From the sequence record NC_070957.1: 64,000 bases of DNA; one strand, 5' to 3'. Positions 828 through 21,358 of the stretch are shown here, one piece after another. A program made the translations under genes and the position numbers. The notes under the pieces were generated by a model. The model saw only the letters and a program-made list of their open reading frames with translations, was not told the origin of the DNA and did no database searches. How positions within the stretch are numbered: position 1 is the first letter of the stretch; each line of letters starts with the position of its first letter.

Positions 828-1838
828 GTGAACGTAGACATTAATGATATCGACCACGTGCTCAGTTGCATGAGTGGTTTTGAAGCATTTTCCAATCAGC
901 AGGATAATAGCGATGCAGAGTACGCTAAGTCCTGCCTCAAACTCAATGGGGTGAATCTGGTCGCCATCGCCGGTAATGAGAGTTTCTTTGAAGCTATCAA
1001 ACAGGGCGGAAAGAAGATGTACGAGATGATCGTCAATCTTCTCAGGGGAATCAAGAACTTCTTCTTTGGTTCCGGTGGAACCGGGAAAGATAAAGCAGTT
1101 TCCCAAGCTAAGACCGAAGTGAACAATACCAAGAAAAGCATTGTCATTACGGTGAAGACTTTGGAGAAAGGGGATCTCCCTAGTGGGTCAGCCGGTGTTT
1201 CCAACACCAACCTGAACCGCGCCAAAGAAATGCTGGAAGAAGGTAAAGCCGCCGCTGAACAGATCAACAAACTGATGAGTGGTGAGAACTTTGCACAAGG
1301 TGCAGAAAAATGGACCAAGTTCGTAGAGAACTATACCAGTGCCATGTGGACTGCTGAAAGCCGTGCCCACTTTGTACGCAACATTCCTCAGGTTAAGGTG
1401 AGCGACCTTGCCGCCCAAACCACCAAGCTCGAAAAGAGTCTCCGGGAAGTTGTTGCTGCTATTAAAGACGGTAACAAATACAACCACAATGATGCCCAGT
1501 ATATCGTAACTACGGTGGAAGGCGGTAGCAAGGTTATCGATGCGATGGACAAGGCACGGAGCGCAGCCAAAGAAATGCTCGCAAAAGTCACCATCGATTT
1601 GGAGCACAACAACAAAGAGTACAAGAAACTCTTGGAGTTTACCGACGAAGTTCTTGTTAACCGTGGTAAGGAAATGCAGAAGCTCGGTAGCGATCTCGTC
1701 CGCGTTACTAACAATCTCACCGCACTGATCAAGGACCTGGAAGAAAGTATCAGCTCGCTCTGTTATGGTGTCGGGCGTATCGCCAAGAAATTGGGTGTGG
1801 AATTTAATAACCCGCTTACCTCCATTTTGGCCAAATAA
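828..1838 (+). CDS. Putative head inner-body/ejection protein (paralog of 20417-21358), 336 aa
   Basis: GTG start with GAGGG upstream. N-terminus YAKSCLKLNG...AGNESF aligns by eye with YARTCLELNGYSGNEGF of 20417-21358. G-x-E protease-type sites; helical body. Confidence 0.65.
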   Translation: MNVDINDIDHVLSCMSGFEAFSNQQDNSDAEYAKSCLKLNGVNLVAIAGNESFFEAIKQGGKKMYEMIVNLLRGIKNFFFGSGGTGKDKAVSQAKTEVNNTKKSIVITVKTLEKGDLPSGSAGVSNTNLNRAKEMLEEGKAAAEQINKLMSGENFAQGAEKWTKFVENYTSAMWTAESRAHFVRNIPQVKVSDLAAQTTKLEKSLREVVAAIKDGNKYNHNDAQYIVTTVEGGSKVIDAMDKARSAAKEMLAKVTIDLEHNNKEYKKLLEFTDEVLVNRGKEMQKLGSDLVRVTNNLTALIKDLEESISSLCYGVGRIAKKLGVEFNNPLTSILAK

Positions 1839-1847
1839 CAAATAAAG

Positions 1848-1888
1848 AACTCCTACCTCCCCGTCAAGGGAGGTAGGAGTTAATTTTC
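1848..1888 (+). terminator. Intrinsic terminator, family A
   Basis: AACTCCTACCTCCC-CGTCAA-GGGAGGTAGGAGTT then AATTTTCT; 20-nt core identical to 38612-38631. Confidence 0.8.
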
Positions 1889-1896
1889 TATTTTAT

Positions 1897-1912
1897 TTCA
1901 AACCGATATTAC
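1897..1912 (+). promoter_or_regulatory. Candidate early (virion RNAP) promoter
   Basis: TTCAAACCGATATTAC; last 8 nt one mismatch from the phiKZ early consensus TATATTAC; near copy at 31847-31862. Confidence 0.35.
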
Positions 1913-1998
1913 TTAGTTGATAAACAAATGGTTTATCGAATCAGCGTGTAAGTTGGTAGAGCAACTTACACATCTTTCAACTACACGGGAGGTGACAT

Positions 1999-2130
1999 AT
2001 GTCTCTTTCAGGTTTGGTGAAGTTTAATTCGAATCGCACTAATAGCGGTGAGAAACAACAGGCACCTAATCAAGGTAACGGATTTGTGGTAACGGCCACG
2101 AAACGCATGCCGGACTACCTTAACAAATAA
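1999..2130 (+). CDS. Small protein, 43 aa (MSLSGLVKFNSNRTNSGEKQQAPNQGNGFVVTATKRMPDYLNK)
   Basis: Read by hand, below ORF-track cutoff. Strong SD GGAGGTGA shortly before ATG 1999; TAA at 2128-2130; flanked by terminators. Confidence 0.6.
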   Translation: MSLSGLVKFNSNRTNSGEKQQAPNQGNGFVVTATKRMPDYLNK

Positions 2131-2149
2131 TAGGTGGTCAACGTAATAA

Positions 2150-2176
2150 AGTACCTCTCCCAATGGGAGAGGTACT
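2150..2176. terminator. Bidirectional terminator between small ORF and DNA polymerase gene
   Basis: AGTACCTCTCCC-AAT-GGGAGAGGTACT, 12-bp stem; AATAAA upstream gives the minus-strand U-tract. Confidence 0.75.
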
Positions 2177-2197
2177 ACACCCATAACTTATTTTTTT

Positions 2198-3940: not shown

Positions 3941-3977
3941 TGTTACACTCTCTACTTAATCTAATTATAAGACCTCG

Positions 3978-3986: not shown

Positions 3987-4056
3987 ACGTCTTAAGAAAT
4001 GGGGTTCGCTAAACTATAGCTTCCTCACTGTTTATTTACTCCGGAGCAAAACAGTT

Positions 4057-5412
4057 ATGATTGGTATTGACTTCATCAGACCCCGGGCCGATTTCGGACC
4101 CATGGGGTTTAGTGGTTTGGAATTTTTGGACAAACAAACTGACACAGTATTTCGTCAGCTTGTTACCATGTTCCAGACCATGATCAAACAAGATCAGCAC
4201 GGTCAAAACGTCCTGGATTGGGACAACGCTGACCGCCAGGAAATCAGTGATTATCTTCTCGACGCAACCGGGATGAAGATCATTATGATGGATGGCACCA
4301 ACACCGTTGGTAACGCCGCTATCGAAGCAGGGTACTTCTCCCCCAACAACCTGATCAACAGCACCGAGGTTGACAAGTGGTTGGATGTGAAACACACCAA
4401 CGTTGCACAGGCACTCCGTACACTCAAGGTTGACGTGATGTCCGGTTGGATCGATACTTCTACTGGTAAGGTCGGTGGTGACCTCAGTAAGATCGAATTC
4501 AAACTCTACATCCAGTCCTACCTGGACATGTTCCTCGTTCAAAAGCGTTTCGCTAAATGGGGTGCTAACTTCCCCGAGCTGTTGGCTTCCATTGTTCTTC
4601 ATGAAATGGGTCACGCTTGGACAGCGATGGTTTACGCATTCCAAACCTGTTTCGACTCTTTGTTCCCGATTGCTGCGGTTCGACTGGCGATGAACGCCAA
4701 GGGTGAACGCGAGAAAGCAACGATCATCAAAGAAGCAAAGGCAGCCCTGGAGATCCCTGAGAACCTCACGGACAAAGATCTCGAAGTAATGGCCGATCCC
4801 GAAGGTCTGACACTCTACTTCAAGAAAGCCATCGAAACCCGCAACCTCCGTCGTACACTGTCTCTGGGTGTCAGTGCTCGTAACGCTGAAAGCTTCGCTG
4901 ACATTTACGCTGTTCGGATGGGTGCCAGTAAAGAACTGGTGATCGCACTCGCTTCTCTTCCAAACGCCGTCCCGATGTGGGTCCCGACTTGGTTCATGGT
5001 GGCTGCCGTGCTTGGTTCCATGGTGGGTTCTCCTTTCATTGTCGGTTACGCCGGCACCATGGCTGTGTTGATGACTCTGGTCTCCCTGGCGGAATCTCTT
5101 CGCCCTGGCGATACTTACGACACTCCGTATCGTCGTATAAAGGCAATCCTTCGTGAGATGGTTGCTGAATTCCAGAATTCCAAGCACCTCTCCAACAATG
5201 ACAAACGTCGTCTGTTGAATCAGTGCAAAGACATGGCCAAACTGATCGAAGATCAGAAACCCATGCTGGAAGGTACTGCCGTTCAACGCATGGTAGGTTG
5301 GATCTTCTCTGGTTCTGACTTCAAGGCTCAGGACTTCGAACACTACACCCACGAAATCATGTCCCACAATCTCAGTCTCTACGAAGACTTCTTCAAATCC
5401 GATAAGGAGTAA
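4057..5412 (+). CDS. Zincin (M48-like) metallopeptidase-like protein with hydrophobic hairpin, probable virion protein, 451 aa
   Basis: HEMGH (4600-4614), downstream AESFADIYA, ~40-aa hydrophobic segment; first gene of the structural operon. Confidence 0.7.
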   Translation: MIGIDFIRPRADFGPMGFSGLEFLDKQTDTVFRQLVTMFQTMIKQDQHGQNVLDWDNADRQEISDYLLDATGMKIIMMDGTNTVGNAAIEAGYFSPNNLINSTEVDKWLDVKHTNVAQALRTLKVDVMSGWIDTSTGKVGGDLSKIEFKLYIQSYLDMFLVQKRFAKWGANFPELLASIVLHEMGHAWTAMVYAFQTCFDSLFPIAAVRLAMNAKGEREKATIIKEAKAALEIPENLTDKDLEVMADPEGLTLYFKKAIETRNLRRTLSLGVSARNAESFADIYAVRMGASKELVIALASLPNAVPMWVPTWFMVAAVLGSMVGSPFIVGYAGTMAVLMTLVSLAESLRPGDTYDTPYRRIKAILREMVAEFQNSKHLSNNDKRRLLNQCKDMAKLIEDQKPMLEGTAVQRMVGWIFSGSDFKAQDFEHYTHEIMSHNLSLYEDFFKSDKE

Positions 5413-5866: not shown

Positions 5867-7414
5867 ATGGAAGTTACTGGCACTGAAGAAAAGAAGCTGG
5901 GTAGTGTTATCCAGCTTTCCCCGCACGGTCAATCCGAGAATGTTCGGATGATCTCTCAACCCGAAGATGGTGAACCACTGGTCTCTTTGGACGATATGTA
6001 CGAAGTGACTGGCCAAGAAGCTATCACCAAACTGGTTCGTAGCTGCAACGAGTACTTCAAGAAAGGTCGTCTTGCCAAAGAGTCGATGACCTGTCTCAAC
6101 CTGGTTGGTGCTGAAAGCTTTGTTCCGATGTACGACAAGTACAACGCCCGTCTGGGTGGTGAAAGCTTCGTCAAAGGTCTGAAAGACGGTTTCGTGGCTG
6201 TCATCAAGGCGATCATCAAGTGGATCAAAGCACTGACAGCCTGGATCATCAATGGTGTTAAAACTCTGTTGGGGTTCAACAAAACCGAACATGAGTGCGC
6301 CATCGCTTCCGAGAACGCTGACAGTATCACCAAGAACGTTTCGGCACTCCTCGGTTCTGTATTCGAAACCGGTAAGGATGAATACACTGCTTGGGTGAAT
6401 GACACTGCAATGGTGGAAGGCATTCCCAATAACCTGGGTAACCGGAACACTGTGAAGGTGATTCACGCTAAGACTCTTAGCGCTGAGGAATCTCTCGCCA
6501 AGATGGTGGCGAATACAGAAGTCATCAACCAAGTGGACAAGCTGATCGCTGATTCCCGAGCTCGTGAACAGAAGGCTGCTTCTGATTACAAAGTTGCTAT
6601 CGCAAGACTTCGTCGTAAGGCGAAAGAAGAGAAAGTAACTGAATCAGATGTTGCTGAGTTCGTTGAAGAACTCGAACGGATCGTATTCCAGGACATCAAG
6701 TTCCGTGAACTGGCCAAGACCTCCAAAGACCTGATTTCGTCTCTGTTCGATATCGAGATTAAGGACCTGGGTTACGACGCCAACTTCAAGGAATTGAAAG
6801 AGCTCACTCGGAACCAGATCATCACCACACAGGTGAAGACATTCGATCGCCAGGAAGCTGTTTTCGCCAAAGCACTAGCTGGTATTAAGAAACGCACTGC
6901 TGACGCATCCACTCGTTTCCTCGATACCAAAGCAATGACTGCGTTCAGTGAAATCGCCGACGAAGATGACGCTATCTTCATTCGTGGTGTTTCCGAGATC
7001 ACTGGTAACGGCATCATGGGTGACTTCGCGACCTTCAAGACACGTCAGCGTGGTTATCTGGAGCTGATCGAAACAGTTACTCGTGTTCTGGCATCCACCA
7101 AAGCCACCATGAACAGCATGGTCGATTACAACTCTCGTTTGAAGGCGATCACCGCCGCTTACGTTGTTCGTGATCTGGAAGCCATTGCCGATTACAACAA
7201 GAAGATCAGTAAAGAGAATGCCGACATTCTGACTCAGGGTGGTGGTTCTCTCTTCTTCGATATGGATGACACTTCCGTACTGAAGTCGTACTATCCTGGT
7301 CTCCATGTAACTGACGATCTGGTACTCGCCATCCGCAACGCACGGGAACTCCCCAAGGTGAAAGGTGCTATCAACAACCTGCTGGGTTCTCTCGGTGTTG
7401 GTATGAGGGTTTAA
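5867..7414 (+). CDS. Head/ejection protein with propeptide, 515 aa
   Basis: TGQEAI, VGAESF and LGGESF sites then an amphipathic helix; helical body; position among phiKZ/SPN3US-type head genes. Confidence 0.7.
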   Translation: MEVTGTEEKKLGSVIQLSPHGQSENVRMISQPEDGEPLVSLDDMYEVTGQEAITKLVRSCNEYFKKGRLAKESMTCLNLVGAESFVPMYDKYNARLGGESFVKGLKDGFVAVIKAIIKWIKALTAWIINGVKTLLGFNKTEHECAIASENADSITKNVSALLGSVFETGKDEYTAWVNDTAMVEGIPNNLGNRNTVKVIHAKTLSAEESLAKMVANTEVINQVDKLIADSRAREQKAASDYKVAIARLRRKAKEEKVTESDVAEFVEELERIVFQDIKFRELAKTSKDLISSLFDIEIKDLGYDANFKELKELTRNQIITTQVKTFDRQEAVFAKALAGIKKRTADASTRFLDTKAMTAFSEIADEDDAIFIRGVSEITGNGIMGDFATFKTRQRGYLELIETVTRVLASTKATMNSMVDYNSRLKAITAAYVVRDLEAIADYNKKISKENADILTQGGGSLFFDMDDTSVLKSYYPGLHVTDDLVLAIRNARELPKVKGAINNLLGSLGVGMRV

Positions 7415-7415
7415 C

Positions 7416-8096
7416 ATGGTTATCAAAGAAGAAATCCGCAAAACAGCGGAAGAGATCATTGCTGGTCAGCAACAACTGAACCGGTACAATGAGTACTACG
7501 AAACGTTCCTCTCAGAGGCGCGGTGTAAGAAGGGGATCATGGATTTCCTTAGCACCCTCTTCGACAAAGAAACTACTGACGAATTCGTTCAGTATCCCTA
7601 TGGTCGAGCCAGAGAAGAAATGGTTCTCAAACTCACCACTGGTAAGTCGGCAGCTAACTCTATGCTCTGTCGTCGACTGATCATGGACGTGGGTGTGGAA
7701 TCCAGAGGTTTCCAAGCTTTGGAAGAAGCACGCAAGACACTTCTCAATCAAGTAGCCGATTATATCGTGCAGACCTTTGAGAAGCTGAACAAGTCAGAAC
7801 TGACGGATGTGCATGAGCGCCATGTGTATTTGCGCCGTGCAATCGCTAAGCTGGTTCGGTTGTTCTACACCGCTCCCCTGGCAGCTATCACCATGGACCA
7901 ATGGTCCGAGGTTGAACCTTCCGAACACACCAAGTATCTCACTACCACTATCGAGGAAATGGTTGATCGGATTCGACCGACTCGTACTGATGGCTGGTGT
8001 TCTGTTTGGTTCGCTGAAAATGGTTTGGATAACACGAACGTTATTCGTTCCATTATCAGTTATCTGGACTATCTGGATACATTCGACCAGTATTAA
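7416..8096 (+). CDS. Hypothetical protein, 226 aa
   Basis: ORF track; starts 2 nt after the previous stop; followed by terminator. Confidence 0.65.
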   Translation: MVIKEEIRKTAEEIIAGQQQLNRYNEYYETFLSEARCKKGIMDFLSTLFDKETTDEFVQYPYGRAREEMVLKLTTGKSAANSMLCRRLIMDVGVESRGFQALEEARKTLLNQVADYIVQTFEKLNKSELTDVHERHVYLRRAIAKLVRLFYTAPLAAITMDQWSEVEPSEHTKYLTTTIEEMVDRIRPTRTDGWCSVWFAENGLDNTNVIRSIISYLDYLDTFDQY

Positions 8097-12181: not shown

Positions 12182-13294
12182 ATGATACTTGAAGCCGTTT
12201 CGTTTGGTCAGATGCTCAGTACCGTAGCCAAGATCTTTGGTAAGGGTAAGGATCTGACTGACGCCATCGATCCCGTGCTGGATACCGCCGCTAAAGCGAT
12301 GAACCTGATGAACACGCGCAGTGTTTCACAGTCTGCATCCCGCACGCTCATCTCCCCTATGGTTGCGATCGAACGCGATCTGATCCACCAGGAGTACATG
12401 ACCGACGTCGTTACAGTCGTCAACATCCGTGACATCAAAGACGCCCTCTCCCACCTTGCTTTGCAGGGTGAAGTAGACGGTATCAAAATCAGTCACTTGA
12501 TCGATCAGATCAACCCCCGTCGTGCCGGTCTTCTGGCACTGTCCGGTCTGGAAGCTTTCGCCGGTAATGAGTCGGCAGCTCCTGTTCAGAATAAGGGAAC
12601 GAAGATCCCTGCGACAGGTAAAGAGTCTCCTCGTGTCAGCATTGGTGGCAAGGAATACTCCGACCTGACTACCTTCCAACCGCTCGCTGTAGGCCGGACA
12701 GTTATCGCTTCTGTACGGATCGGTAGTGGTAACCCGGTAGAGTTTCCGCTCAATTTCCGTCAGGTTCCAATTCCTGTCTCTTCAAATGATCTGGAAGCCA
12801 TCTTCTCGGCGGCTCGTTCTACCGATGGTTTCTTCGGTCGTATCAGCATGTTGCAGGGTGGTGAAATCACTCTTCCCGAGTTCCTCACTGGTACTGACGA
12901 GATCAAACGTGAATTCAATATTCGCATGAACGATCTCTCTGGTTATTACAGTGAAGCAATGGCTCGTGATAGCAACAACAAGAAAGCGGCACTGCGGACT
13001 GGTCTGGTCTCCATGAACACCATGGCTAACACCATCATCATGTCCAAGGCCACTGCCAACCAGATCGAGCTGGAACACGGTCTCCGTTTCGATCGTAACG
13101 GTATCACCAAGATCCGTCAGAAAGTGATGGCCAACACTATCGTTATCATCGATGACGACTCCGGACTGTTCACATTCTGGAACGCCGGCCAACCTCTGCC
13201 GGAACAGTACACTCGTCGCGAGATCCAGGTAACCGCTAAGAAGGATACCTCCATGGATCTGGCATCCCTCATGAAAATGTTCAACGGGCGGTAA
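12182..13294 (+). CDS. Head inner-body protein (phiKZ gp089-like), 370 aa
   Basis: SD TAGGAG; SGLEAFAGNES tandem G-x-E sites; synteny. Confidence 0.65.
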   Translation: MILEAVSFGQMLSTVAKIFGKGKDLTDAIDPVLDTAAKAMNLMNTRSVSQSASRTLISPMVAIERDLIHQEYMTDVVTVVNIRDIKDALSHLALQGEVDGIKISHLIDQINPRRAGLLALSGLEAFAGNESAAPVQNKGTKIPATGKESPRVSIGGKEYSDLTTFQPLAVGRTVIASVRIGSGNPVEFPLNFRQVPIPVSSNDLEAIFSAARSTDGFFGRISMLQGGEITLPEFLTGTDEIKREFNIRMNDLSGYYSEAMARDSNNKKAALRTGLVSMNTMANTIIMSKATANQIELEHGLRFDRNGITKIRQKVMANTIVIIDDDSGLFTFWNAGQPLPEQYTRREIQVTAKKDTSMDLASLMKMFNGR

Positions 13295-14173: not shown

Positions 14174-14690
14174 AGAGTTCCGTCATGCTCGGTTCGGTAT
14201 GATCCCCAGTGATCTGTCCCAACCTATGATGGACATGAATGAACAGGTGTTCAAGAGCTTCCTCCGTAATTGTGGGACGGGAGCTCTCATGTCCAGCCTC
14301 GACAGTCATGTGGAGATCTTCTCCCTTGGCTCTCATTACATCGGCGATAACTTCCGTAACTGGCTGATCGCCAACTACTACAACGGTAAGGGCGTTCGTT
14401 CTGAACTGGTTAGCAAAATTGTTGCTTACATTCAGGGTGAAGTGACTGGCAATGCGGTGACCAATCAACTGAAGATTGATAACACCAAACTGACTTACGC
14501 TCCTCCCGGTAAGCAGATCGCTCAACCTATGTTGTTCAAGGTGGACGATTTCCGTTCCAAGAAAGATCCCGTGGAGCATGTCAACTTTAATGTGGTCAAG
14601 AACGAGCATATGTACGACTTCTTTGCTCTGATTGGTCCTGAAGGTTTGGCGCGTCTCTGCCTCAGCCTGGATGGTACTGCAAATGGATAA
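14166..14690 (+). CDS. Hypothetical protein, 174 aa (start revised to GTG 14166)
   Basis: GGAG at 14155-14158, 7 nt before an in-frame GTG overlapping the upstream stop region. Confidence 0.6.
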   Translation: MAKEFRHARFGMIPSDLSQPMMDMNEQVFKSFLRNCGTGALMSSLDSHVEIFSLGSHYIGDNFRNWLIANYYNGKGVRSELVSKIVAYIQGEVTGNAVTNQLKIDNTKLTYAPPGKQIAQPMLFKVDDFRSKKDPVEHVNFNVVKNEHMYDFFALIGPEGLARLCLSLDGTANG

Positions 14691-15951
14691 AGATCTCGAA
14701 ACCAAACTGTTAATGAGTGAGGTTTCTCTGGCCAAGATCGACGACGTGGAGAAAATGACCAAAGAAGCGAAAGCTGCTGTTCATAATCTCCGTACCGACG
14801 TTCGTGTCAAAGACCGGGTTGAAGAGATCCTCAAAGAAGTGGAATCTCGTCAGGACTATGAACTGACAACTTCCTTTATCCAACAAGTGGATTCCGAAAT
14901 CAATGAATATGGCCGGTCCAAGATTGGTCGTAATGGAATGATCAGTGTGGCTGGTACCGAAGCGTTCGGTCTCACCATCATGCCGCGTGATTGGCGTTCC
15001 AGTCGTCTGGAAGCACTGCGTGATCTCCTCGCCGATACTTATAAGAACATCAAGCGTTGGGCAAACCAACTCGAAGATTCCTTTAAGGATCGTTGGACTG
15101 AGATCTCCACCACTCTGGAAGTGATCAGAACGCGCGTAGACAACGTTGAAGAACACCTGGATATGGTTCAGGGTCTCCGGGACGAATGTCGCACTGTGAC
15201 GATCCCAGGCATCGTGGTGAAAGCACTGACCAAGGGTAGCGAACCTGTACCCAAGGATATCTCCAGTTCTGTCATCAAAGACATCAACTACTTTGCTTCA
15301 GTAATGAAGTTTGTTGAAGCCGAAGAAGTGCGTGTCAAGAACGCGATCACCAAGTATTTCGGTAACCCTAAGCTCAAAGACATGTCCAGCATGGTGTTTG
15401 GGATCCCCCGTATCTTGGACGTCAGAGTTAAGAGTGAAGACCAGTCTGATGTTGGTAAATACGTTGAAATGGCTAGCCGTCCGTTCCTGGAAGGTTTCCG
15501 TATCAACTGTAAGGCGATCGATCCTCGTTTCCTCAAGAACGGTTACGAGCCGGGTGCTGGTAACACCGACCTGGTGTCCATGATGGTTGAATGCGGAATC
15601 GACTTGCAGCGTGTTGAACGCCGTGAAAGCAAGGAAGAGACAATCAAAACTCTTACTCTTTCCGATCTCTTCACTCTGACTAGCGCTGTCAAGGACATGG
15701 TTCTTTACATTGAACGTGCCAATGACAAAGACAGTCCGCTCAACATGAACCCGTCTGAAGTCAAGGATAACCTGGCGACCCTGAAGAGTAACGAAGACGA
15801 GAAGGAGCGAGCCGATCACTATGTCGCCCTCGCCACCGATTACCAATTCCGTCTGAATGCACTCCGGGCTGACATTGCCAGTTATCTTACTGTTCTGACA
15901 AGTCATCTGCTCACGTTCATCACACTCAACCTGGAGTGTTACGATGCCTAA
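14683..15951 (+). CDS. Head/inner-body family protein, 422 aa (start revised to ATG 14683)
   Basis: ATG overlaps the upstream stop region; charged propeptide-like N-terminus then AGTEAF. Confidence 0.65.
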   Translation: MDKDLETKLLMSEVSLAKIDDVEKMTKEAKAAVHNLRTDVRVKDRVEEILKEVESRQDYELTTSFIQQVDSEINEYGRSKIGRNGMISVAGTEAFGLTIMPRDWRSSRLEALRDLLADTYKNIKRWANQLEDSFKDRWTEISTTLEVIRTRVDNVEEHLDMVQGLRDECRTVTIPGIVVKALTKGSEPVPKDISSSVIKDINYFASVMKFVEAEEVRVKNAITKYFGNPKLKDMSSMVFGIPRILDVRVKSEDQSDVGKYVEMASRPFLEGFRINCKAIDPRFLKNGYEPGAGNTDLVSMMVECGIDLQRVERRESKEETIKTLTLSDLFTLTSAVKDMVLYIERANDKDSPLNMNPSEVKDNLATLKSNEDEKERADHYVALATDYQFRLNALRADIASYLTVLTSHLLTFITLNLECYDA

Positions 15952-16906
15952 CATCAATGCAACCTTGGAAATCGCAATGCGTGAAATGCACTGTGGTTTC
16001 GTTGTGGATGGTAATGAGTCGTATCTCACCGATATGTTCTCGACTACCAAGACCGCTATTTTCAGTGCGGTTAAACAAGGTGCGGGTAAGGCCAGCGAAA
16101 GTCTTGTAAGAGCGTTGCGTAATGCTGATCAAGCTCTGCTCAAAGCAATCGGTGCACGCCGATTGCTTCTTTCCACAATGGTCAACCGTGCCAACCGTGA
16201 CGGCGTTAAAGAGGAAATCACTTTCCCGGCAGGTTTGCTGAGCCGGACAACTGTGAAAGGTTATCCCGGAGACATCGTCAAATCGATTGAAGTGTTGATG
16301 GAAGCTATCAAACAGGTAGCTGACTACGAACAAGACCTGGAAGGATTCTACGAGAAGCAACTCGCTCTCCTCAAATCTATCACCAAGATCAAGGACACCA
16401 AGGAAGCCGCCGAACTCATCACCAAACTGGATGATATGAAGCGACCCGCTCCCAAGTTCCCTGACAGTGTTAATTCTATGTCGAAGAGAACCAAGCTTTT
16501 GCCGGGTGGTCGTGACTTCGTTTACAACTCCGAGACTGATCGTTTCTCGATCGGTAACTCTGACGTTGATGCCAAGGATGAAACTACATCCTTTGCTAAG
16601 GAAGACATGATCCGTATTCTCGCTATGTTGAACAAACTTATCGAGACGTACACTTCCATCAGTAAGGCTAACGAGCGCTATGCAAAGCACGTTTCCGAAT
16701 TCAATACTGTGGTAGGTAAGAGCTTTTCTCACCTTGAAGGTCTCAAGGGTTCTGTTAGTGCCACTTTGCTGAACGATCTCTCCGGTCGTCTCAATGGTGA
16801 TGCTAGCACCTTTGCTTTCTATACCGGCTTCCTCCCCAAGGTAGTTTTGGTTGTAGACAATCATGTGGAAGAACTCACGTCCTTCTTAAGTAAACACTTT
16901 AATTAA
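15944..16906 (+). CDS. Head/inner-body family protein, 320 aa
   Basis: SD GGAG; DGNESY site; paralog cluster. Confidence 0.65.
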   Translation: MPNINATLEIAMREMHCGFVVDGNESYLTDMFSTTKTAIFSAVKQGAGKASESLVRALRNADQALLKAIGARRLLLSTMVNRANRDGVKEEITFPAGLLSRTTVKGYPGDIVKSIEVLMEAIKQVADYEQDLEGFYEKQLALLKSITKIKDTKEAAELITKLDDMKRPAPKFPDSVNSMSKRTKLLPGGRDFVYNSETDRFSIGNSDVDAKDETTSFAKEDMIRILAMLNKLIETYTSISKANERYAKHVSEFNTVVGKSFSHLEGLKGSVSATLLNDLSGRLNGDASTFAFYTGFLPKVVLVVDNHVEELTSFLSKHFN

Positions 16907-16958: not shown

Positions 16959-18125
16959 ATGTCTCTGCATACTGTATTCGCTAGCGTTGCTGGCCAAGAA
17001 GACTCCAGCGTAGCTGTCGTTACCGAAGCTACCGTCGAGCAACTGGTTGAAGCCCAGGTTGAGGCCGAAGTAGCCGAAGCGACTGCCGAAGTAGCCGAAA
17101 TCGAGAAGGACATGGACAAGATCGAACTGTCCATGGACGCGATCGAAGACAAGGTTGAAGAGCTGGAAGAAGCCATCGAAGGCATGGAATCCATGCTGGC
17201 TGGTTCCGTCGAGTTCAACGCCGGTCTGTTCGCCCACCAGTTCGCCCAGGCTACCAAGATCGCCAACCGTTTCGGTGGTGAGCAAGTTGCCGTTCTGGGT
17301 GCCGAGTCCCTGGCTGATGCCGGTACTGCTCAGCTGAACGCTGTTGCCGGTATCGAATCCTTCAAGGAAAAGCTGTCCGCCGGTGCTAGCGCCGTCAAGG
17401 GCTTCTTCGTTGAGCTGTACAACAGCTTCATCAACTTCGTCACCGGTATCTTCAACAAGTACAAGGCCCTGGGTAACAAGGCTACCGCTCTGAAGACCAA
17501 GGTCGAAGCCAAGAAGGAATTCGAAGGCGAAGTCAAGCGTCCGAAGGCTGCTGGCTGGGTTGCCGCTGATGGTAAGGGTCCGGATGTTGCCGCTCTGATG
17601 AGCAAGGTCCTGTCCGACGCCGATTCCGTTGCCACCGGTAAGTGGATGAAGGCTGCCGACGCAGTCAACTCCGTCAAGGCCATCGGTCAGTCCAGCCCGG
17701 CTGGTTCCACCGAAAACACTGCTACCTTCAAGGTACAGGTTGGTACCGGTGTTGTGACCTGCGTGGTTCCGAAGACTGAAGCCGGTCTGGGTTCCGCTGA
17801 CATCGCTGTTGGTTCCGCCTCCACCGATCTGACCGCCATCAAGTCCATGAGCAAAGAGGGCCTGGTCGGTCTGTGCAACAGCGTCTCCGCTGAAATCGGT
17901 AAGATCCAGAGCCAGAAGCTGGACGGTAAAGCCCTGGCCGCCAAGCGCGACAAGGTCATCGCCGAACTCGAGAAGTACCAGAAAGAGAACGGTGCCAAGA
18001 ACCAGTCCTACATCGCTGCTGCCCGTGCTGGCCACAAAGCCATCCTGCGCATCCAACGTGGTGTACTGAAGCTGGGTGAACAGATCCTGGGTGCCAAGCT
18101 GGCCCTGGTTGCTGCTCACGTCTAA
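16959..18125 (+). CDS. Abundant inner-body/ejection protein (phiKZ gp093 / SPN3US gp53-54 type), 388 aa
   Basis: Glu-rich propeptide, LGAESL and AGIESF sites, extreme codon bias like the capsid gene, own terminator. Confidence 0.75.
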   Translation: MSLHTVFASVAGQEDSSVAVVTEATVEQLVEAQVEAEVAEATAEVAEIEKDMDKIELSMDAIEDKVEELEEAIEGMESMLAGSVEFNAGLFAHQFAQATKIANRFGGEQVAVLGAESLADAGTAQLNAVAGIESFKEKLSAGASAVKGFFVELYNSFINFVTGIFNKYKALGNKATALKTKVEAKKEFEGEVKRPKAAGWVAADGKGPDVAALMSKVLSDADSVATGKWMKAADAVNSVKAIGQSSPAGSTENTATFKVQVGTGVVTCVVPKTEAGLGSADIAVGSASTDLTAIKSMSKEGLVGLCNSVSAEIGKIQSQKLDGKALAAKRDKVIAELEKYQKENGAKNQSYIAAARAGHKAILRIQRGVLKLGEQILGAKLALVAAHV

Positions 18126-18189: not shown

Positions 18190-18212
18190 ACCGTCCTTTG
18201 TTTATTTTCAAG

Positions 18213-18221
18213 AATGCTATG
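18213..18221 (+). promoter_or_regulatory. Candidate late promoter AATGCTATG
   Basis: Matches 3978 and 29509; lies between a terminator and the next gene. Confidence 0.45.
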
Positions 18222-18241
18222 GCTTCTTATAGGAGGACATC

Positions 18242-19345
18242 ATGTCTTTAAGCTTATCCAATAAAGGTGCCGGTGGAACGACCTCTGATAAAACAGTTGG
18301 TGAGACACTCGGTCCCTACGAAGAGAGTATGGCTTTCTTCGAAAAGAAAGAAATTAAGGTTGATAAGGAGAGTGTTACTTTCCCTAACAAACTTTATGTC
18401 GATGGTATTGAATCCATCGTAACCAGTTTCGGTTCTGTTCAGGTTCCTCTTCGTCAATACCTGGGTTCCGAGAATGAACAAACGCTGGCTGACGACTATA
18501 GTGGTAATGAATCCCTCGGTGAAACACTGAAGAACATCATGAAAGCTATCATCCAGCTGGCCAAAGACGCAGTTGAGTTCGTGATGAACCTGATCAACAA
18601 TAAACTCACACGTCTGGATAACGCACTATTCCGTCTGAAGGGTCGTAGGAAGCGTCAAGGTCTCGCTGATAAGGAAGTTTCTTATCCCATTGGGGTAAGA
18701 CGTCTGATGATCCCTGGTAAGGTTTCCACTGGTCCTGAATGGATTCCTGCTTCTCTCACCGAAGTGAAGAAGTTCTATCAGAGCTACATCAAAACCTATC
18801 GTGATCTTACCAAGCTGATTTACATCAGTCCCGATCACTTTAGTCCTGAAGCTCACAACGAAAAGATCAATGCCATCATGCGTACTGATATGGGGATGAA
18901 CATCGCCCAGTCAAACAGTGATGGTTCTGATGCGTATCGTTGTGGTCCGATTCCGGGTAACCGTTATTTCTGCTTTGATAGCCGAAGCGACGTAAAGGCA
19001 GAACGGTCCAGCATCTACTTCACTGACACCACCATGGAAGTGAAGTTGCTGTCCAAGACCTTCATGGCCACAGGTCACGTTATCGATAAGACTATTGACG
19101 GTATTCAGGAGTTGATTGATGAAGTGCGAAAGAACCAGAAAACTGTTGGCGAGCTCCACCGCGAGTTCGAGAAGGCGGTTGTGGGTTTTGAGAAGAGAGA
19201 AGGACGAGCAGTCACAGCAGACCAGCGACACTTCCTCAGGTACCTCATCAATCATTCCAAACGTCAGTCCCAACTGACAGTCCAGTACGTCACCTCTGTA
19301 TGTGACATCGCCATGGACTTCTGTGACGCAGGTATCCGTAAATGA
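18242..19345 (+). CDS. Head/inner-body family protein, 367 aa
   Basis: SD AGGAGG; DGIESI and SGNESL sites then an amphipathic helix. Confidence 0.7.
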   Translation: MSLSLSNKGAGGTTSDKTVGETLGPYEESMAFFEKKEIKVDKESVTFPNKLYVDGIESIVTSFGSVQVPLRQYLGSENEQTLADDYSGNESLGETLKNIMKAIIQLAKDAVEFVMNLINNKLTRLDNALFRLKGRRKRQGLADKEVSYPIGVRRLMIPGKVSTGPEWIPASLTEVKKFYQSYIKTYRDLTKLIYISPDHFSPEAHNEKINAIMRTDMGMNIAQSNSDGSDAYRCGPIPGNRYFCFDSRSDVKAERSSIYFTDTTMEVKLLSKTFMATGHVIDKTIDGIQELIDEVRKNQKTVGELHREFEKAVVGFEKREGRAVTADQRHFLRYLINHSKRQSQLTVQYVTSVCDIAMDFCDAGIRK

Positions 19346-19878
19346 ACATAGAGATCTCTACGATTTGTCGTAAGCGATTGAAGCGTTCAGTGATTTGTCT
19401 GTACAACGACCTTACCGACGATACACTCGATGTCGCTGTCGATCCACTTACACTGCACAACCATAATGACTCGTGCATTCTGGTTAAGGACGGATTAAGT
19501 CACGGTGGGTTGTTGGTTGATAAGATCGACCTGAAAGATTTGTTCCCCGGTACGTTGGATATCCGACACTACAAGGGTCAAAACAAAGATCATCACCAAG
19601 TAGTGATGGACACGTCACAAGAGGGCCTGAATCGCTTTATAAACGATTTCTCCGCCAAACACGACTGTGACATGGTGGGTCTCAATCATCCTCTCCTGAA
19701 CGATCCTGTAAGCTATAGCAAAGAGTTGCTACGAAACTTTGTTCTGTTCTGTCGGTTGCATGGGTTCTGGGAACTCGATGCTGTTGATTTGAGCCTGCAC
19801 ATGGATGAGGAGAAACTCTACATGACCGTTGTCAAAACTCATCCGGTCTACACTGGTTCAATCGAGGTACTGATATGA
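19342..19878 (+). CDS. Hypothetical protein, 178 aa
   Basis: ORF track; 4-nt overlap coupling with neighbours. Confidence 0.6.
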   Translation: MNIEISTICRKRLKRSVICLYNDLTDDTLDVAVDPLTLHNHNDSCILVKDGLSHGGLLVDKIDLKDLFPGTLDIRHYKGQNKDHHQVVMDTSQEGLNRFINDFSAKHDCDMVGLNHPLLNDPVSYSKELLRNFVLFCRLHGFWELDAVDLSLHMDEEKLYMTVVKTHPVYTGSIEVLI

Positions 19879-20414
19879 ACGAAACCCTGAATCACGATTT
19901 GTTCCTTCTTTTGAAGCAGCAGCTTGTGATTGCCGAACTTGTCTCTCTCAATGCCGCGGTAAAAATCGACGGTATTGAAGTTGACATTAACGAATTGGAG
20001 AAGAGCATTGTTAAACTGGTTACTCAGATTGACCAGGACATGACTCCTCCCATTGCACTCTTGGCTGGACGTAAAGTGAAGGTCGATGTTCGTGGGCTGG
20101 CCAACGAGCTCTCTGATAGCCTTTCACGGTACTACGGGGGTCAAGGTGCATGCAATCCTGAACGTATCGCTTTCCTGGTCCACAAGTGTCCACGCAACGA
20201 TGAAGTGATCGATCTGTGTAACCTCGAAGAGTACTCTAACTACGACAAAGAAGATGTGACTACACTTCTTGTCCAGGTGACTCGCATCACTGATGCTGTT
20301 CGAGGTTTCCGCAAAGCCAATGAACGCTCATTGGGTGGTCTGTTGGTATTGGTCAACTTCATGCAGATTGTCGATATGGTGTTTGAAACCACCAATGAAC
20401 GTTATGGAGCCTAA
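19875..20414 (+). CDS. Hypothetical protein, 179 aa
   Basis: ORF track; ATGA overlap; SD GAGGT. Confidence 0.6.
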   Translation: MNETLNHDLFLLLKQQLVIAELVSLNAAVKIDGIEVDINELEKSIVKLVTQIDQDMTPPIALLAGRKVKVDVRGLANELSDSLSRYYGGQGACNPERIAFLVHKCPRNDEVIDLCNLEEYSNYDKEDVTTLLVQVTRITDAVRGFRKANERSLGGLLVLVNFMQIVDMVFETTNERYGA

Positions 20415-20416
20415 CT

Positions 20417-21358
20417 ATGGGTACAGTAACAGATTTACCACAACACAGTTGGGATGAGGACGATTATCCCGACGCAGCAGTGACTGCTTCCGATGACATG
20501 CCCACGGTATATCCTACTGAGGAACAGCGTGCCAGGGAAGAGCAGCAAGAGAGCGATCTCAAACACGCAGAACTCATCCTGGACGGTTACGGTGAGATGC
20601 TGGGCGATAAAGAACCTGGAATGGATATCTCCGGTAATGAAGCCTACGCCAGAACTTGTCTGGAGCTGAATGGCTACAGTGGCAATGAAGGGTTTGGTGA
20701 AGACCTCGCAGCCTCCGGCAAAGCCGCGTACGAGTCTCTCAAAGAAGTACTCAGTAACATCATGAAGTATTTCAAGGGTGACGGCAAGGCTCGCGCTGAA
20801 GCCGCTGAAGAAGGTAGTAAAACTGCTATCAAAGCCCTGGCTGAAAACGAGGATCGTTCAGCACCGATCAAGAAAGAGTCCGTACTCGCTAAGTCCGCAA
20901 CCTACGTCGCTAGCCTTCGTGAGACTCAGGTCATCGCTGCTATTCTCAGTAAGCACCCCGATCTCAAGAAGTCATTCGAGGACGTAGTTGCGGCAACTAG
21001 CCGGATTGACAACGCGCAAACCGTAGGTCAGTTCGGGGCTTGCTTGGAACTCATGTCCAGTAAAGCGGCCGCCTGTCTCGATAAGGTCCTCACACTCGCA
21101 GAAGAACAGCTCCGGAATGCAGACACAACTGTTTCCAAACTTCGTTCTCCTAAACGGGTTGGGGACACCGAACCCTCCGAGGTAAAGGCCGCGGCTAAAG
21201 CCGAACAAAAGGGTGTTGTTGATCAAGGCAAAGAAGCGGTAGCCGATGCTCGTAAGTTCACCTCTATTCAGAACACCCTTATCGGGTACCTGAACAAGAT
21301 TGCTGGTGCTGCCAACTCTGTTGCCAAGGTAAAAGCACCTTCCAAATTCAAGGGGTGA
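20417..21358 (+). CDS. Head/inner-body family protein (paralog of 828-1838), 313 aa
   Basis: Acidic propeptide; SGNEAY and SGNEGF; Ala/Lys-rich helical body. Confidence 0.7.
   Translation: MGTVTDLPQHSWDEDDYPDAAVTASDDMPTVYPTEEQRAREEQQESDLKHAELILDGYGEMLGDKEPGMDISGNEAYARTCLELNGYSGNEGFGEDLAASGKAAYESLKEVLSNIMKYFKGDGKARAEAAEEGSKTAIKALAENEDRSAPIKKESVLAKSATYVASLRETQVIAAILSKHPDLKKSFEDVVAATSRIDNAQTVGQFGACLELMSSKAAACLDKVLTLAEEQLRNADTTVSKLRSPKRVGDTEPSEVKAAAKAEQKGVVDQGKEAVADARKFTSIQNTLIGYLNKIAGAANSVAKVKAPSKFKG

What the first reader, a model, noticed from the sequence alone, without database searches (positions are those of the whole stretch)
828..21358. Head-protein family: G-x-E cleavage site followed by a cationic amphipathic helix
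Seen: at least seven genes (828, 5867, 14683, 15944, 16959, 18242, 20417) have an often acidic N-terminal region, then G-x-E-[S/A/G]-[F/L/Y], then a Lys-rich amphipathic helix. Examples: SFVKGLKDGFVAVIKAIIKWIKALTAWII (from 6164), SFFEAIKQGGKKMYEMIVNLLRGIKNFFFG, SLGETLKNIMKAIIQLAKDAVEFVMNLI, SFKEKLSAGASAVKGFFVELYNSFINFVTGIF. Known: phiKZ-family prohead proteases cut after S/A/G-x-E, and inner-head proteins are ejected into the host. Inference: maturation unmasks membrane-seeking helices that resemble antimicrobial peptides. They could form a protease-armed module for building the trans-envelope conduit or the early-infection vesicle.
Basis: partly seen in the sequence, partly recalled or inferred. 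Interest (0 to 1): 0.75.

Follow-up and report, generated by a model that had tools for sequence, protein, structure and literature searches.

The report
Protease-cut internal head protein cassette
Seven head-protein genes of the nucleus-forming jumbo phage Aeromonas D3 carry a conserved cut site for the head-maturation protease directly in front of the first helix of a helical-bundle domain. The family and its processing are already known, and the proposed membrane role of that helix remains an untested idea.

Summary
The window is Aeromonas phage D3 (Chimalliviridae), gene-for-gene syntenic with phiKZ gp83-gp120. The motif is real: G-x-E-[SAG]-[FLY] occurs 18 times in 43 window proteins against 2.6 expected. 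It also marks the major capsid protein, the portal and the gp89 homologue, so it is the recognition site of the gp175-type prohead protease.

All seven N-terminal regions are acidic (-3 to -23). The helix claim holds only in part. It is strongly amphipathic in 828, 18242, 20417 and 5867, clearly cationic only in 828 and 5867, and unremarkable in 14683, 15944 and 16959.

Six genes belong to the PF12699 "phiKZ internal head protein" superfamily. Gene 5867 is the positional counterpart of phiKZ gp86 and SPN3US gp47.

What is new, modestly:
- A homologous cassette of about 70-110 residues (acidic propeptide, G-x-E site, helix) is shared across these otherwise different families.
- 220 database representatives match it at E <= 0.001; among the 149 best examined, Gly and Glu are invariant.
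- Mass-spectrometry-mapped N-termini of SPN3US gp53, gp54 and gp47 start with the same kind of helix.

AlphaFold places the site at the N-cap of a confidently modelled bundle helix. The charge geometry is apolipoprotein-like (class A), not antimicrobial-peptide-like. Membrane targeting is neither shown nor excluded.

The parts
828..1838 (+). D3 gp198. Member of a multi-copy paralogue family (with 20417) that carries the full cassette. Predicted elongated all-alpha bundle.
   Evidence: Annotation. Paralogue family. AF2 pLDDT 83.6 and pTM 0.82. Twenty of 41 family members give sub-threshold PF12699 hits at profile positions 86-120.
972..980 (+). G49-N50-E51, predicted maturation site of gp198. 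A second conserved G-F-E lies at 876-884.
   Evidence: G49 and E51 are invariant in 148 of 148 representatives.
981..1067 (+). Helix S52-F80 directly after the site. Most amphipathic segment of the protein, net charge +3 over the first 30 residues.
   Evidence: AF2 helix H50-80 with pLDDT 86-93.
5867..7414 (+). D3 gp194. Positional counterpart of phiKZ gp86, SPN3US gp47 and 201phi2-1 gp148; homologue of OBP gp102.
   Evidence: Synteny. tblastn hit to OBP. PHROG 14541.
6155..6163 (+). G97-G98-E99, predicted maturation site. An upstream G-A-E lies at 6107-6115.
   Evidence: Invariant in the 9 homologues of A1 and in 12 phage orthologues.
6164..6268 (+). Hydrophobic, amphipathic helix S100-L134. 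Most hydrophobic segment of the protein and borderline transmembrane (Kyte-Doolittle 19-residue mean 1.69).
   Evidence: Best-conserved block of the family.
14683..15951 (+). D3 gp187, a PF12699 member at the gp92 position. Site G91-T92-E93 at 14953-14961. The following segment is not notably amphipathic.
   Evidence: Pfam E 2.5e-14..
15944..16906 (+). D3 gp186, remote PF12699-like paralogue. Site G23-N24-E25 at 16010-16018. The following segment is only weakly amphipathic.
   Evidence: hhalign 93.7% to the 14683 family and 86% to the 18242 family..
16959..18125 (+). D3 gp185, 'internal head protein' (PF12699). Propeptide of 133 residues with charge -23. Sites G-A-E at 17298-17306 and G-I-E at 17349-17357. 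Helix at 17358-17465.
   Evidence: Pfam E 2.2e-27..
18242..19345 (+). D3 gp184 (PF12699). Site G88-N89-E90 at 18503-18511. Strongly amphipathic but neutral helix at 18512-18616.
   Evidence: Pfam match starts at residue 88 = profile position 90..
20417..21358 (+). D3 gp181, paralogue of 828. Sites G-N-E at 20633-20641 and 20681-20689. Amphipathic helix region at 20690-20779.
12182..13294 (+). gp89 homologue. Conserved G-L-E site at 12545-12553 with A/S-F after it, but no helix follows. Shows that P1'/P2' belong to the protease motif and not to the helix.
29584..31752 (+). Major capsid protein. Motif copies at 29698-29706 and 29950-29958. Residues 77-137 weakly resemble the propeptide half of the cassette.
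38648..41905 (-). Portal protein (phiKZ gp129 homologue). Motif copies at 41354-41362 and 41231-41239, in its N-terminal region.
   Evidence: SPN3US portal has a 254-residue propeptide (PMC10052503).

Best explanation
The seven genes encode substrates of the chimallivirus prohead protease (the phiKZ gp175 / SPN3US gp245 type). Six belong to the PF12699 internal-head / ejection protein superfamily. One (5867) is the gp86/gp47-type head protein.

They share a homologous N-terminal cassette: an acidic, helical propeptide; one or two loop-exposed sites with the consensus hydrophobic-x-G-x-E | S/A/G - F/L; and then the first long helix of an elongated all-alpha bundle.

How it most likely works:
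1. The precursor is built into the prohead core, with the conserved propeptide half serving as targeting and/or protease-docking element. This step is inferred by analogy with the T4 capsid-targeting sequence and with the SPN3US gp47 data.
2. The protease cuts after Glu at the N-cap of the bundle's first helix. The site position is shown by homology and by the model; the cut itself is inferred for D3.
3. This removes 25-133 acidic residues and leaves a mostly basic helical-bundle protein (net +3 to +14 in five of seven) inside the DNA-filled head. From there the PF12699 members are later injected with the genome, as shown for phiKZ and Goslar relatives and inferred for D3.

The S/A/G-F/L after Glu is a subsite preference of the protease. 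The amphipathicity of the next helix is primarily what a bundle helix needs in order to pack, and its positive charge follows the basic character of the mature proteins. Any membrane activity after ejection would be an additional, unproven property.
For: - Identity and synteny with phiKZ gp83-gp120. Family Chimalliviridae.
- PF12699 above threshold for 14683, 16959 and 18242.
- Profile-profile links: 828~16959 94.4%, 16959~18242 96.1%, 14683~15944 93.7%, 15944~18242 86%, 828~5867 94.8%, 20417~5867 95.2%. The predicted P1 residues align exactly.
- Motif enrichment and near-invariance in orthologues. The same motif is present in the MCP, the portal and the gp89 homologue, without a following helix.
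- A profile of the 828 family finds 220 representatives at E <= 0.001, and most match only profile positions 1-110. G49 and E51 are invariant in 148 of 148.
- The site maps to PF12699 profile positions about 88-92, where the matches of phiKZ gp92, phiKZ gp96 and D3 18242 begin.
- SPN3US N-termini mapped by mass spectrometry (gp53 after E125, gp54 after E137, gp47 after E111; PMC5694885, PMC10052503) are followed by helices of the same type.
- AF2 of 828: loop 40-49, helix 50-80 with pLDDT 86-93, overall pTM 0.82.
- The phiKZ capsid paper states that cleavage separates the helix-rich domains of gp93 and gp162 from their N-terminal capsid-binding regions, and that mature gp86 is a helix bundle whose modelled N-terminus lies near the cleavage site.
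- gp175 homologue in the near-identical phages D9 and LAh10: 36% identity, E 1e-25.
- Acidic propeptides and basic mature parts.
Against: - No D3 virion proteomics exists in what I could reach, so no N-terminus is mapped for D3 itself.
- I could not compute burial of the helix because no model coordinates were available. The 5867 model was poor (pLDDT 51).
- In 828 and 5867 the helix is the best-conserved block of the family and the most amphipathic or most hydrophobic segment of the protein. That is more than ordinary bundle packing requires and points to an extra function.
- Direct profile comparisons of the D3 families with single phiKZ or SPN3US sequences are not significant (probability below 10%). 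The link to experimentally mapped sites therefore rests on Pfam coordinates, synteny and the motif itself.
- 14683 has an acidic mature part (-7), so the 'basic mature protein' rule is not general.
Confidence: 0.72

Rival explanations
1. Cleavage unmasks free, antimicrobial-peptide-like cationic helices. After ejection these insert into the inner membrane and build the trans-envelope conduit or the early-infection (EPI) vesicle.
For: - HeliQuest-type discriminant (formula from my own knowledge) is above 1.34 for 828 (1.67) and 5867 (1.59), and 2.66 for the module consensus. Only 3% of background 18-mers exceed 1.34.
- The 5867 helix is borderline transmembrane. The SPN3US gp47 counterpart is clearly transmembrane-like (Kyte-Doolittle 2.58), and its authors proposed membrane interaction.
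- Acidic propeptides could mask cationic helices.
- PF12699 proteins co-localise with the lipid-stained EPI vesicle, and injected gp93 pulls down membrane proteins.
- How the vesicle forms is an open question.
Against: - Five of the seven D3 helices fall below the 1.34 threshold, and three are unremarkable.
- The helix is a confident element of the predicted bundle.
- The gp86 counterpart is bundle-packed on the capsid in the virion.
- Acidic residues sit at the centre of the polar face and Lys at its edges, which is a class A pattern, not that of lytic peptides.
- A conserved Glu lies in mid-helix (E66: 113 Glu plus 24 Asp of 148).
- Cytoplasmic truncated gp93 is tolerated and lacks the membrane interactors.
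- P1'/P2' are explained by the protease alone.
Confidence: 0.12
2. The cassette is read as one unit before cleavage. Propeptide plus first helix would form the element that targets the protein to the prohead core and docks it on the protease. The helix would then be conserved for assembly, not for a post-ejection role.
For: - Homology spans both sides of the scissile bond in families whose C-terminal domains differ.
- Most database relatives share only profile positions 1-110.
- The MCP propeptide weakly matches the propeptide half, with two G-x-E sites at similar spacing.
- A C-terminally truncated SPN3US gp47 is still packaged, and SPN3US gp243 is needed to incorporate gp53/gp54.
- Specific polar residues of the helix are conserved: K58, K63, E66, K73.
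Against: - The MCP match stops 11 residues after the site and is weak (7 bits).
- Nothing here tests binding.
- If only targeting mattered, the helix could be discarded with the propeptide, as T4 does with its capsid-targeting sequence.
Confidence: 0.3
3. The cationic face of the helix serves DNA contact and charge neutralisation inside the packed head, like the basic T4 internal proteins. Removal of the acidic propeptide is what permits DNA packaging.
For: - Mature parts are basic in five of seven (+3 to +14) and propeptides are acidic.
- gp93 is reported to associate with phage DNA and to travel with it to the nucleus.
- The next helix of 828 (H82-114) is also +4.
Against: - This explains the charge but not the strong, conserved hydrophobic face or the aromatic F-F-F-G end.
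- The 18242 and 20417 helices are neutral, and mature 14683 is acidic.
Confidence: 0.25
4. Chance or compositional artefact. The pattern would be a short motif in Ala/Lys/Glu-rich helical proteins, multiplied by paralogy.
For: - Six of the seven genes are paralogues, so the seven occurrences are not independent.
- Plain G-x-E is not enriched.
Against: - The extended motif is about sevenfold enriched.
- It is invariant across 20-40% identical orthologues and 148 of 148 representatives.
- It is present in the unrelated MCP and portal.
Confidence: 0.02

Closest known systems
Pfam PF12699 'phiKZ-like phage internal head proteins' (phiKZ gp92-97, gp162, gp163; SPN3US gp53/gp54; Goslar gp53-58)
   Same: - Three D3 genes pass the Pfam threshold, and the others link to them by profile-profile comparison.
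- Same operon position.
- Acidic N-terminal region removed at an x-E site.
- Helix-rich bundle.
- Variable number of paralogues per phage.
   Different: - P3 is almost exclusively Gly in the D3/OBP clade. It is S/A/G (L-S-x-E) in phiKZ and Ala in SPN3US.
- 828 and 20417 belong to a separate multi-copy subfamily that Pfam does not call.
- No virion, copy-number or injection data exist for D3.
phiKZ gp86 / 201phi2-1 gp148 / SPN3US gp47 (cleaved head protein in the gp85-gp87 slot)
   Same: - 5867 sits in the same slot.
- Propeptide of about 100 residues.
- Site directly followed by a hydrophobic/amphipathic helix.
- SPN3US gp47 is essential, inferred to be ejected, and has a predicted N-terminal transmembrane helix in the mature form.
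   Different: - No significant sequence similarity to gp86 or gp47 (hhalign probability below 1%). Homology is demonstrable only to OBP gp102-type proteins.
- In phiKZ the mature protein is a structural part of the capsid vertex complex.
- The D3 helix is only borderline transmembrane (1.69 against 2.58).
T4 internal proteins and capsid-targeting sequences cut by the gp21 prohead protease
   Same: - N-terminal propeptide used for prohead incorporation, cut after Glu by a homologous protease.
- Basic internal proteins injected with the DNA.
   Different: - The T4 propeptides are 10-20 residues long and are not homologous.
- T4 has no conserved amphipathic helix at the new N-terminus.
Exchangeable apolipoproteins (apoLp-III, PF07464) and class A amphipathic helices
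   Same: - Elongated bundles of amphipathic helices.
- Lys at the polar/non-polar boundary and acidic residues at the centre of the polar face.
- Five of 41 relatives of 828 give ApoLp-III hits.
   Different: - The best hit is just under Pfam's threshold (35.7 against 36.3 bits) and lies in the C-terminal domain of a relative, not in D3.
- No apolipoprotein appears among the 50 Foldseek matches listed.
- Lipid binding is untested.
Cationic antimicrobial-peptide precursors with anionic pro-pieces
   Same: Acidic pro-region, proteolytic release, cationic amphipathic helix at the new N-terminus.
   Different: - The helix stays attached to a domain of 220-420 residues and is predicted to be part of its fold.
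- It has a conserved mid-helix acidic residue and class A charge geometry.
- Net charge is 0 to +1 in five of the seven D3 proteins.

Membership tests
PF12699 phiKZ_IP superfamily | Match to the Pfam model above the gathering score (27 bits) | tested here: met
   14683 scores 53.7 bits, 16959 scores 96.7 and 18242 scores 51.7. Not met directly by 828, 15944, 20417 or 5867.
PF12699 phiKZ_IP superfamily | Remote homology of the non-Pfam genes (828, 15944, 20417) to Pfam-positive members | tested here: met
   hhalign: 828~16959 94.4%, 20417~16959 94.5%, 14683~15944 93.7%, 15944~18242 86%. Twenty of 41 members of the 828 family hit PF12699 below threshold.
PF12699 phiKZ_IP superfamily | Helix-rich elongated bundle fold | tested here: met
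   AF2 of 828 is all-alpha with nine helices of 12-48 residues plus a 6-residue C-terminal one, pTM 0.82. BFVD matches are all chimallivirus virion proteins. The other six genes were not modelled successfully.
PF12699 phiKZ_IP superfamily | Location in the conserved head-gene block downstream of the gp89-gp91 homologues | tested here: met
   828 lies outside this block, upstream of the gp83 homologue.
PF12699 phiKZ_IP superfamily | Presence in the virion at high copy number, and injection into the host | not testable with these tools
   Shown only for phiKZ, Goslar and SPN3US relatives.
Substrates of the phiKZ gp175-type prohead protease | The phage encodes the protease | tested here: met
   tblastn of phiKZ gp175 finds D9 and LAh10 (98-99% identical to D3 over the 3.1 kb compared) at 36% identity, E 1e-25. 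Twenty Aeromonas phage records match in all. D3's own row was not among the 60 listed.
Substrates of the phiKZ gp175-type prohead protease | Conserved small-x-Glu site, also present in MCP and portal propeptides | tested here: met
Substrates of the phiKZ gp175-type prohead protease | Mature N-terminus mapped at the site | not testable with these tools
   Only indirect support. The site sits at the same Pfam profile position as the start of the conserved core and in the same region as the SPN3US sites mapped by mass spectrometry.
gp86 / gp47 / gp148 head protein | Gene slot between the gp85 and gp87 homologues | tested here: met
   Also OBP gp102, which PMC5694885 names as the positional equivalent.
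gp86 / gp47 / gp148 head protein | Detectable sequence homology to phiKZ gp86 or SPN3US gp47 | tested here: not met
   hhalign probability 0.6% and 0.4%. A profile search of the PDB does not find 8Y6V gp86. The authors of PMC5694885 also report this slot as diverged beyond detection.
gp86 / gp47 / gp148 head protein | Long propeptide, with the site followed by a hydrophobic helix | tested here: met
Lytic (class L) antimicrobial-peptide-like helix | High net positive charge and a Lys-filled polar face essentially without acidic residues | tested here: not met
   Net charge is 0 to +1 in five of seven. In 130 representative helices, 81% of D/E lie at 150-180 degrees from the hydrophobic moment and 43% of K/R lie at 90-120 degrees. 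The class definitions are from my own knowledge (Segrest classification).
Apolipophorin-III (PF07464) | Pfam match above the gathering score | tested here: not met
   The best relative, P0024, scores 35.7 against 36.3 bits. No D3 protein hits at E <= 0.01.

The most novel reading that the evidence does not exclude
The conserved cassette is a protease-gated switch found across the chimalliviruses sampled. In the precursor the acidic propeptide keeps a class A (apolipoprotein-type) amphipathic first helix, and the bundle behind it, closed and targeted to the prohead. Cleavage frees the helix. After ejection the hundreds to thousands of PF12699-type bundles, together with the gp86/gp47-type protein carrying the most hydrophobic version of the helix, open onto the inner-membrane lipid. 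There they coat or shape the early-infection vesicle around the incoming genome. This would give the 'mystery' PF12699 proteins a function and the vesicle a mechanism.
Probability: 0.15. Interest if true: 0.75.

Novelty: new member of a known kind. Interest (0 to 1): 0.4.

Why it matters
[quoted passage not shown] The mechanism of early-infection vesicle formation is listed as an open question (PMC12908238).

This analysis does not solve either problem. It adds three concrete, testable facts:
1. Different head and ejection protein families share one homologous propeptide-site-helix cassette.
2. The protease cuts, or is predicted to cut, exactly at the N-cap of a conserved amphipathic helix, so that helix becomes the mature N-terminus. 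This also holds at the sites mapped by mass spectrometry in SPN3US.
3. The helix has apolipoprotein-type rather than lytic-peptide-type geometry.

For annotation, the clade-specific site logo (hydrophobic-x-G-x-E | S/A/G-F/L) lets one predict mature ends of head proteins in D3/OBP-like phages.

Tried and rejected
- Sequence search of the PDB with 5867, 16959, 828 and the A1 profile gave only coiled-coil noise.
- AF2 of 5867 with 9 homologues gave pLDDT 51, too poor to use. I did not run Foldseek on it.
- Thomas et al. 2012, the paper with the phiKZ cleavage-site table, is not held. The phiKZ sites used are therefore only those quoted in other papers (gp93 E13, gp120 E163, gp162 E17/E137). The gp93 E156, gp95 E260 and gp94 E214 positions are my candidates, not mapped sites.
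- hhalign of the D3 families against single phiKZ or SPN3US sequences was not significant. The exact coincidence of P1 in those alignments is partly circular, because the motif anchors them.
- Foldseek against the PDB found nothing at E <= 0.001. Weak similarities to ClyA and Hbl pore-forming toxins and to designed four-helix bundles were judged generic for long helical bundles.
- The pairwise MCP alignment puts phiKZ E163 opposite D3 E99 rather than the G-A-E at 123-125. The mature end of the D3 MCP is left undecided.
- The apoLp-III lead is kept as a lead only, because it is below threshold and does not occur in D3 itself.
- I considered convergent evolution of the motif-plus-helix in unrelated proteins and rejected it in favour of common descent of the cassette.

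Full report
WHAT THE WINDOW IS. The window is identical to Aeromonas phage D3 (NC_070957.1, positions 62001-126000), a 262 kb jumbo phage. Its genus, Ludhianavirus, is now placed in Chimalliviridae, the nucleus-forming phages. The region is gene-for-gene syntenic with phiKZ:
- 2198(-) = gp83
- 4057 = gp84
- 5415 = gp85
- 5867 = gp86
- 8149(-) = gp87
- 11077(-) = gp88
- 12182 = gp89
- 13298 = gp90
- 14166 = gp91
- 14683 onward = the gp92-97 paralogue array
- 27339(-) = DnaB
- 28907 = gp119
- 29584 = the major capsid protein, gp120

The same order holds in 11 related phages of Aeromonas, Pantoea, Edwardsiella, Klebsiella, Pseudomonas (OBP), Shewanella, Erwinia and Vibrio, and in SPN3US.

THE OBSERVATION: MOTIF. 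All seven genes are annotated CDSs with the stated motif. G-x-E-[SAG]-[FLY] occurs 18 times in the 43 annotated proteins of the window, against 2.6 +/- 1.7 in shuffles (maximum 9 in 500). Plain G-x-E is not enriched. Besides the seven genes, the motif is found in the gp89 homologue (12182), twice in the N-terminal part of the MCP (and once more near its C-terminus), and twice in the N-terminal part of 38648(-). A PDB search identifies 38648(-) as the portal, phiKZ gp129. These are exactly the classes of proteins that phiKZ-type prohead proteases are known to cut. In 85 aligned orthologous sites, P3 is Gly 84 times, P1 is Glu 85 times, P1' is S/A/G 79 times, P2' is F/L/M/W 72 times, and P5 is mostly V/L/I/Y. 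In the gp89 family the A/S-F after Glu is conserved although no helix follows. The two residues after Glu are therefore part of the protease's recognition sequence and not the 'start of a peptide'. The phiKZ protease homologue is present in D9 and LAh10, which are 98-99% identical to D3 over the 3.1 kb compared.

THE OBSERVATION: HELIX. The N-terminal regions are acidic, -3 to -23. The helix claim is uneven.
- Against all 18-residue windows of the 43 proteins, the post-site segment ranks at the 99.8th percentile (828), 99.0th (18242), 95.0th (20417) and 94.4th (5867). It ranks only 58th-65th for 14683, 15944 and 16959.
- Net charge over 30 residues is +3 and +4 for 828 and 5867, and 0 to +1 for the rest.
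- Within their own proteins, the 828 helix is the single most amphipathic segment and the 5867 helix is the most hydrophobic one, with a Kyte-Doolittle 19-residue mean of 1.69, borderline transmembrane.
- A HeliQuest-type discriminant (formula from my own knowledge) exceeds the 'lipid-binding' value of 1.34 only for 828 (1.67) and 5867 (1.59).
- Across orthologues the property is conserved in four families: 828/20417 (moment 0.58-0.72, charge +1 to +5 in the 828-family alignment), 5867 (0.53-0.72; 0 to +4), 16959 (0.35-0.58; +1 to +4) and 18242 (0.50-0.70; -1 to +3). It is absent in 14683 and weak in 15944.

WHAT THE GENES ARE. Pfam places 14683, 16959 and 18242 in PF12699, 'phiKZ-like phage internal head proteins'. 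Genes 828 and 20417 are paralogues of each other and belong to a family with two to six copies per phage in several relatives. Profile-profile comparison links the families and aligns the predicted P1 residues exactly in the cassette-sharing pairs:
- 828~16959: 94.4%
- 20417~16959: 94.5%
- 16959~18242: 96.1%
- 14683~15944: 93.7%
- 15944~18242: 86%

The site of 14683 aligns with the first of the two sites of 16959. Gene 5867 is homologous to OBP gp102, which the SPN3US authors already named as the positional equivalent of phiKZ gp86, 201phi2-1 gp148 and SPN3US gp47. Direct similarity of 5867 to gp86 or gp47 is not detectable.

A SHARED CASSETTE. This is the part I did not find described. The 828 and 20417 families align with the 5867 family at 94.8% and 95.2% probability, but only over 68-123 columns. 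Those columns cover the end of the propeptide, the site and the helix. A profile of the 828 family searched against 1.84 billion representatives finds 220 proteins at E <= 0.001, and most match only profile positions 1-110. Among the 149 best representatives with a module hit, protein lengths run from 129 to 497 residues, and seven carry the module more than 100 residues in from the N-terminus. Among the 149 module-bearing representatives, G49 and E51 are invariant (148 of 148). A first G-x-E (positions 17-19), H10, Y32 and V36-L37 are also conserved. The helix has a sharp consensus with K58, G60, K63, E66, I68, K/R73, I75 and an aromatic F-F-F-G end. The Pfam hits of these relatives fall on PF12699 profile positions 86-120, which is this same site plus helix. 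Scanning all six-frame ORFs of the window with the module profile returns, in order, 828, 20417, 5867, 16959, the MCP and 18242. The MCP match covers residues 77-137 and only the propeptide half.

LINK TO EXPERIMENTALLY MAPPED SITES. In Pfam profile coordinates, the D3 sites fall at about positions 88-94 for 18242 and 16959, and the site of the 828-family relatives at about 88-90. The matches of phiKZ gp92, phiKZ gp96 and D3 18242 begin at 88-90. The SPN3US maturation sites mapped by mass spectrometry (gp53 after E125; gp54 after E124 and E137; PMC5694885, PMC10052503) lie at about 83-97 on the same scale. Each is followed directly by a helix with moment 0.58-0.72 and charge +3. The expected maturation site of SPN3US gp47, after E111, is followed by a clear transmembrane-like helix (Kyte-Doolittle 2.58). 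In phiKZ gp86, an S-Q-E at residue 116 precedes an amphipathic helix (moment 0.65). It corresponds to the published S-Q-E-113 of 201phi2-1 gp148.

STRUCTURE. AF2 of 5867 with nine homologues was too poor to use (pLDDT 51). AF2 of 828 with 41 sequences is good (pLDDT 83.6, pTM 0.82):
- two short propeptide helices (5-22, 28-39)
- a loop (40-49)
- a 31-residue helix (50-80, pLDDT 86-93) that starts at the scissile bond
- then helices 82-114, 127-151, 158-183, 194-214, 230-268 and 274-321

The site thus sits at the N-cap of the first long helix of an elongated all-alpha bundle. Foldseek finds only chimallivirus virion proteins in BFVD and nothing significant in the PDB. The solved mature phiKZ gp86 (8Y6V chain G, 297 modelled residues) is among the top matches at TM about 0.4. 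The phiKZ capsid paper reports that mature gp86 is a helix bundle at the edge of the vertex-binding complex, with its modelled N-terminus near the cleavage site. It also reports that cleavage separates the helix-rich domains of gp93 and gp162 from N-terminal regions that stay glued to the capsid wall. I could not compute burial of the helix because model coordinates are not exposed.

GEOMETRY OF THE HELIX. In 130 representative helices, 81% of Asp/Glu lie 150-180 degrees from the hydrophobic-moment direction, at the centre of the polar face. Forty-three per cent of Lys/Arg lie at 90-120 degrees, at the polar/non-polar boundary. SPN3US gp53 and gp54 and D3 828 and 5867 show the same pattern. 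By the classical classification (my own knowledge), that is the class A pattern of exchangeable apolipoproteins, not the class L pattern of lytic peptides. Separately, five of 41 relatives of 828 give Pfam hits to apolipophorin-III. The best is 35.7 bits against a cut-off of 36.3, in a C-terminal domain. Single relatives hit Apolipoprotein A1/A4/E, Perilipin and REF. No D3 protein does, and no apolipoprotein appears in the listed Foldseek matches. This stays a lead.

WHAT IS KNOWN ABOUT FUNCTION.
- phiKZ gp93, 94, 95, 97, 153, 163, 177 and 184 are injected.
- gp93 co-localises with the lipid-stained early-infection vesicle and then moves with the phage nucleus. Injected gp93, but not an N-terminally truncated gp93 made in the cytoplasm, pulls down membrane-associated host proteins.
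- Goslar virions carry about 2000 copies of one PF12699 protein, and the authors call the role of these proteins a key unsolved mystery.
- The mechanism of vesicle formation is listed as open.
- No paper in the searchable library connects phiKZ inner-body proteins with the word 'amphipathic'; the two papers holding all three search terms are about phage N4.

CONCLUSION. The motif is the recognition site of the prohead protease, here with a clade-specific Gly at P3. The seven genes are new members of known families of cleaved head and ejection proteins.

The helix is the conserved first helix of their helical-bundle domain and becomes the mature N-terminus. Its amphipathicity is expected for such a helix. 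Its exceptional conservation, its hydrophobicity in the gp86/gp47-type protein and its class A geometry leave room for a lipid-related function after ejection.

Three of the seven D3 helices do not qualify, the charge pattern is wrong, and the helix is predicted to be part of the fold.

Roles in targeting/docking or in DNA contact remain compatible with the ordinary explanation and are not mutually exclusive.

Noticed in passing
window 4057-5412 (+): The gp84 homologue (phiKZ gp84 is a structural head protein) contains an H-E-M-G-H motif, which is HExxH zinc-metalloprotease-like, near residue 183. It also has a pair of transmembrane-like hydrophobic segments around residues 300-345 (Kyte-Doolittle 1.91). 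Pfam finds nothing, and PHROG 2767 has no known function.
   Followed up: no
window 29584-31752 (+), residues 77-137: The MCP propeptide weakly matches the propeptide half of the cassette (E about 3e-4 among window ORFs; 7 bits). It has two G-x-E sites 34 residues apart, against 32 in the cassette. The mature end of the MCP is ambiguous: phiKZ E163 aligns to D3 E99, not to the G-A-E at residues 123-125.
   Followed up: partly
window 38648-41905 (-): This 'virion structural protein' is the portal (PDB hits to PHIKZ129 and 'Portal Protein gp36'). It carries two copies of the protease motif, at residues 182-184 and 223-225. This is consistent with a long portal propeptide, as in SPN3US (254 residues).
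   Followed up: partly
L007:34547-35494 and L008:34495-35475 (orthologues of 20417 in phages Survivor and pEt-SU): Directly after the conserved G-M-E site, these two orthologues have a long Ser/Thr-rich low-complexity insert in place of the amphipathic helix.
   Followed up: no
relatives of 828 (P0024 and four others in alignment A3): The C-terminal domains give Pfam hits to apolipophorin-III (best 35.7 bits against a cut-off of 36.3). Single hits go to Apolipoprotein A1/A4/E, Perilipin_2 and REF, all of them lipid-surface-binding amphipathic helix proteins.
   Followed up: partly
window 19875-20414 (+), 47567-48004 (-) and 46616-47206 (+): These small proteins have single transmembrane-like segments (Kyte-Doolittle 1.7-2.2). 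One of them (19875) sits inside the PF12699 paralogue array.
   Followed up: no
window 7416-8096 (+): A 226-residue gene lies between the gp86 and gp87 homologues. It has no counterpart at that position in phiKZ or SPN3US, but it is annotated at that position in all 11 D3/OBP-type phages examined (sequence similarity detected in 8). No PHROG match at E <= 1e-5; Pfam was not run on this protein.
   Followed up: no
sites in the D3/OBP clade (85 aligned sites): P3 of the protease site is Gly in 84 of 85 sites. Published logos give S/A/G (L-S-x-E) for phiKZ and Ala for SPN3US. This suggests a clade-specific shift in protease specificity.
   Followed up: partly
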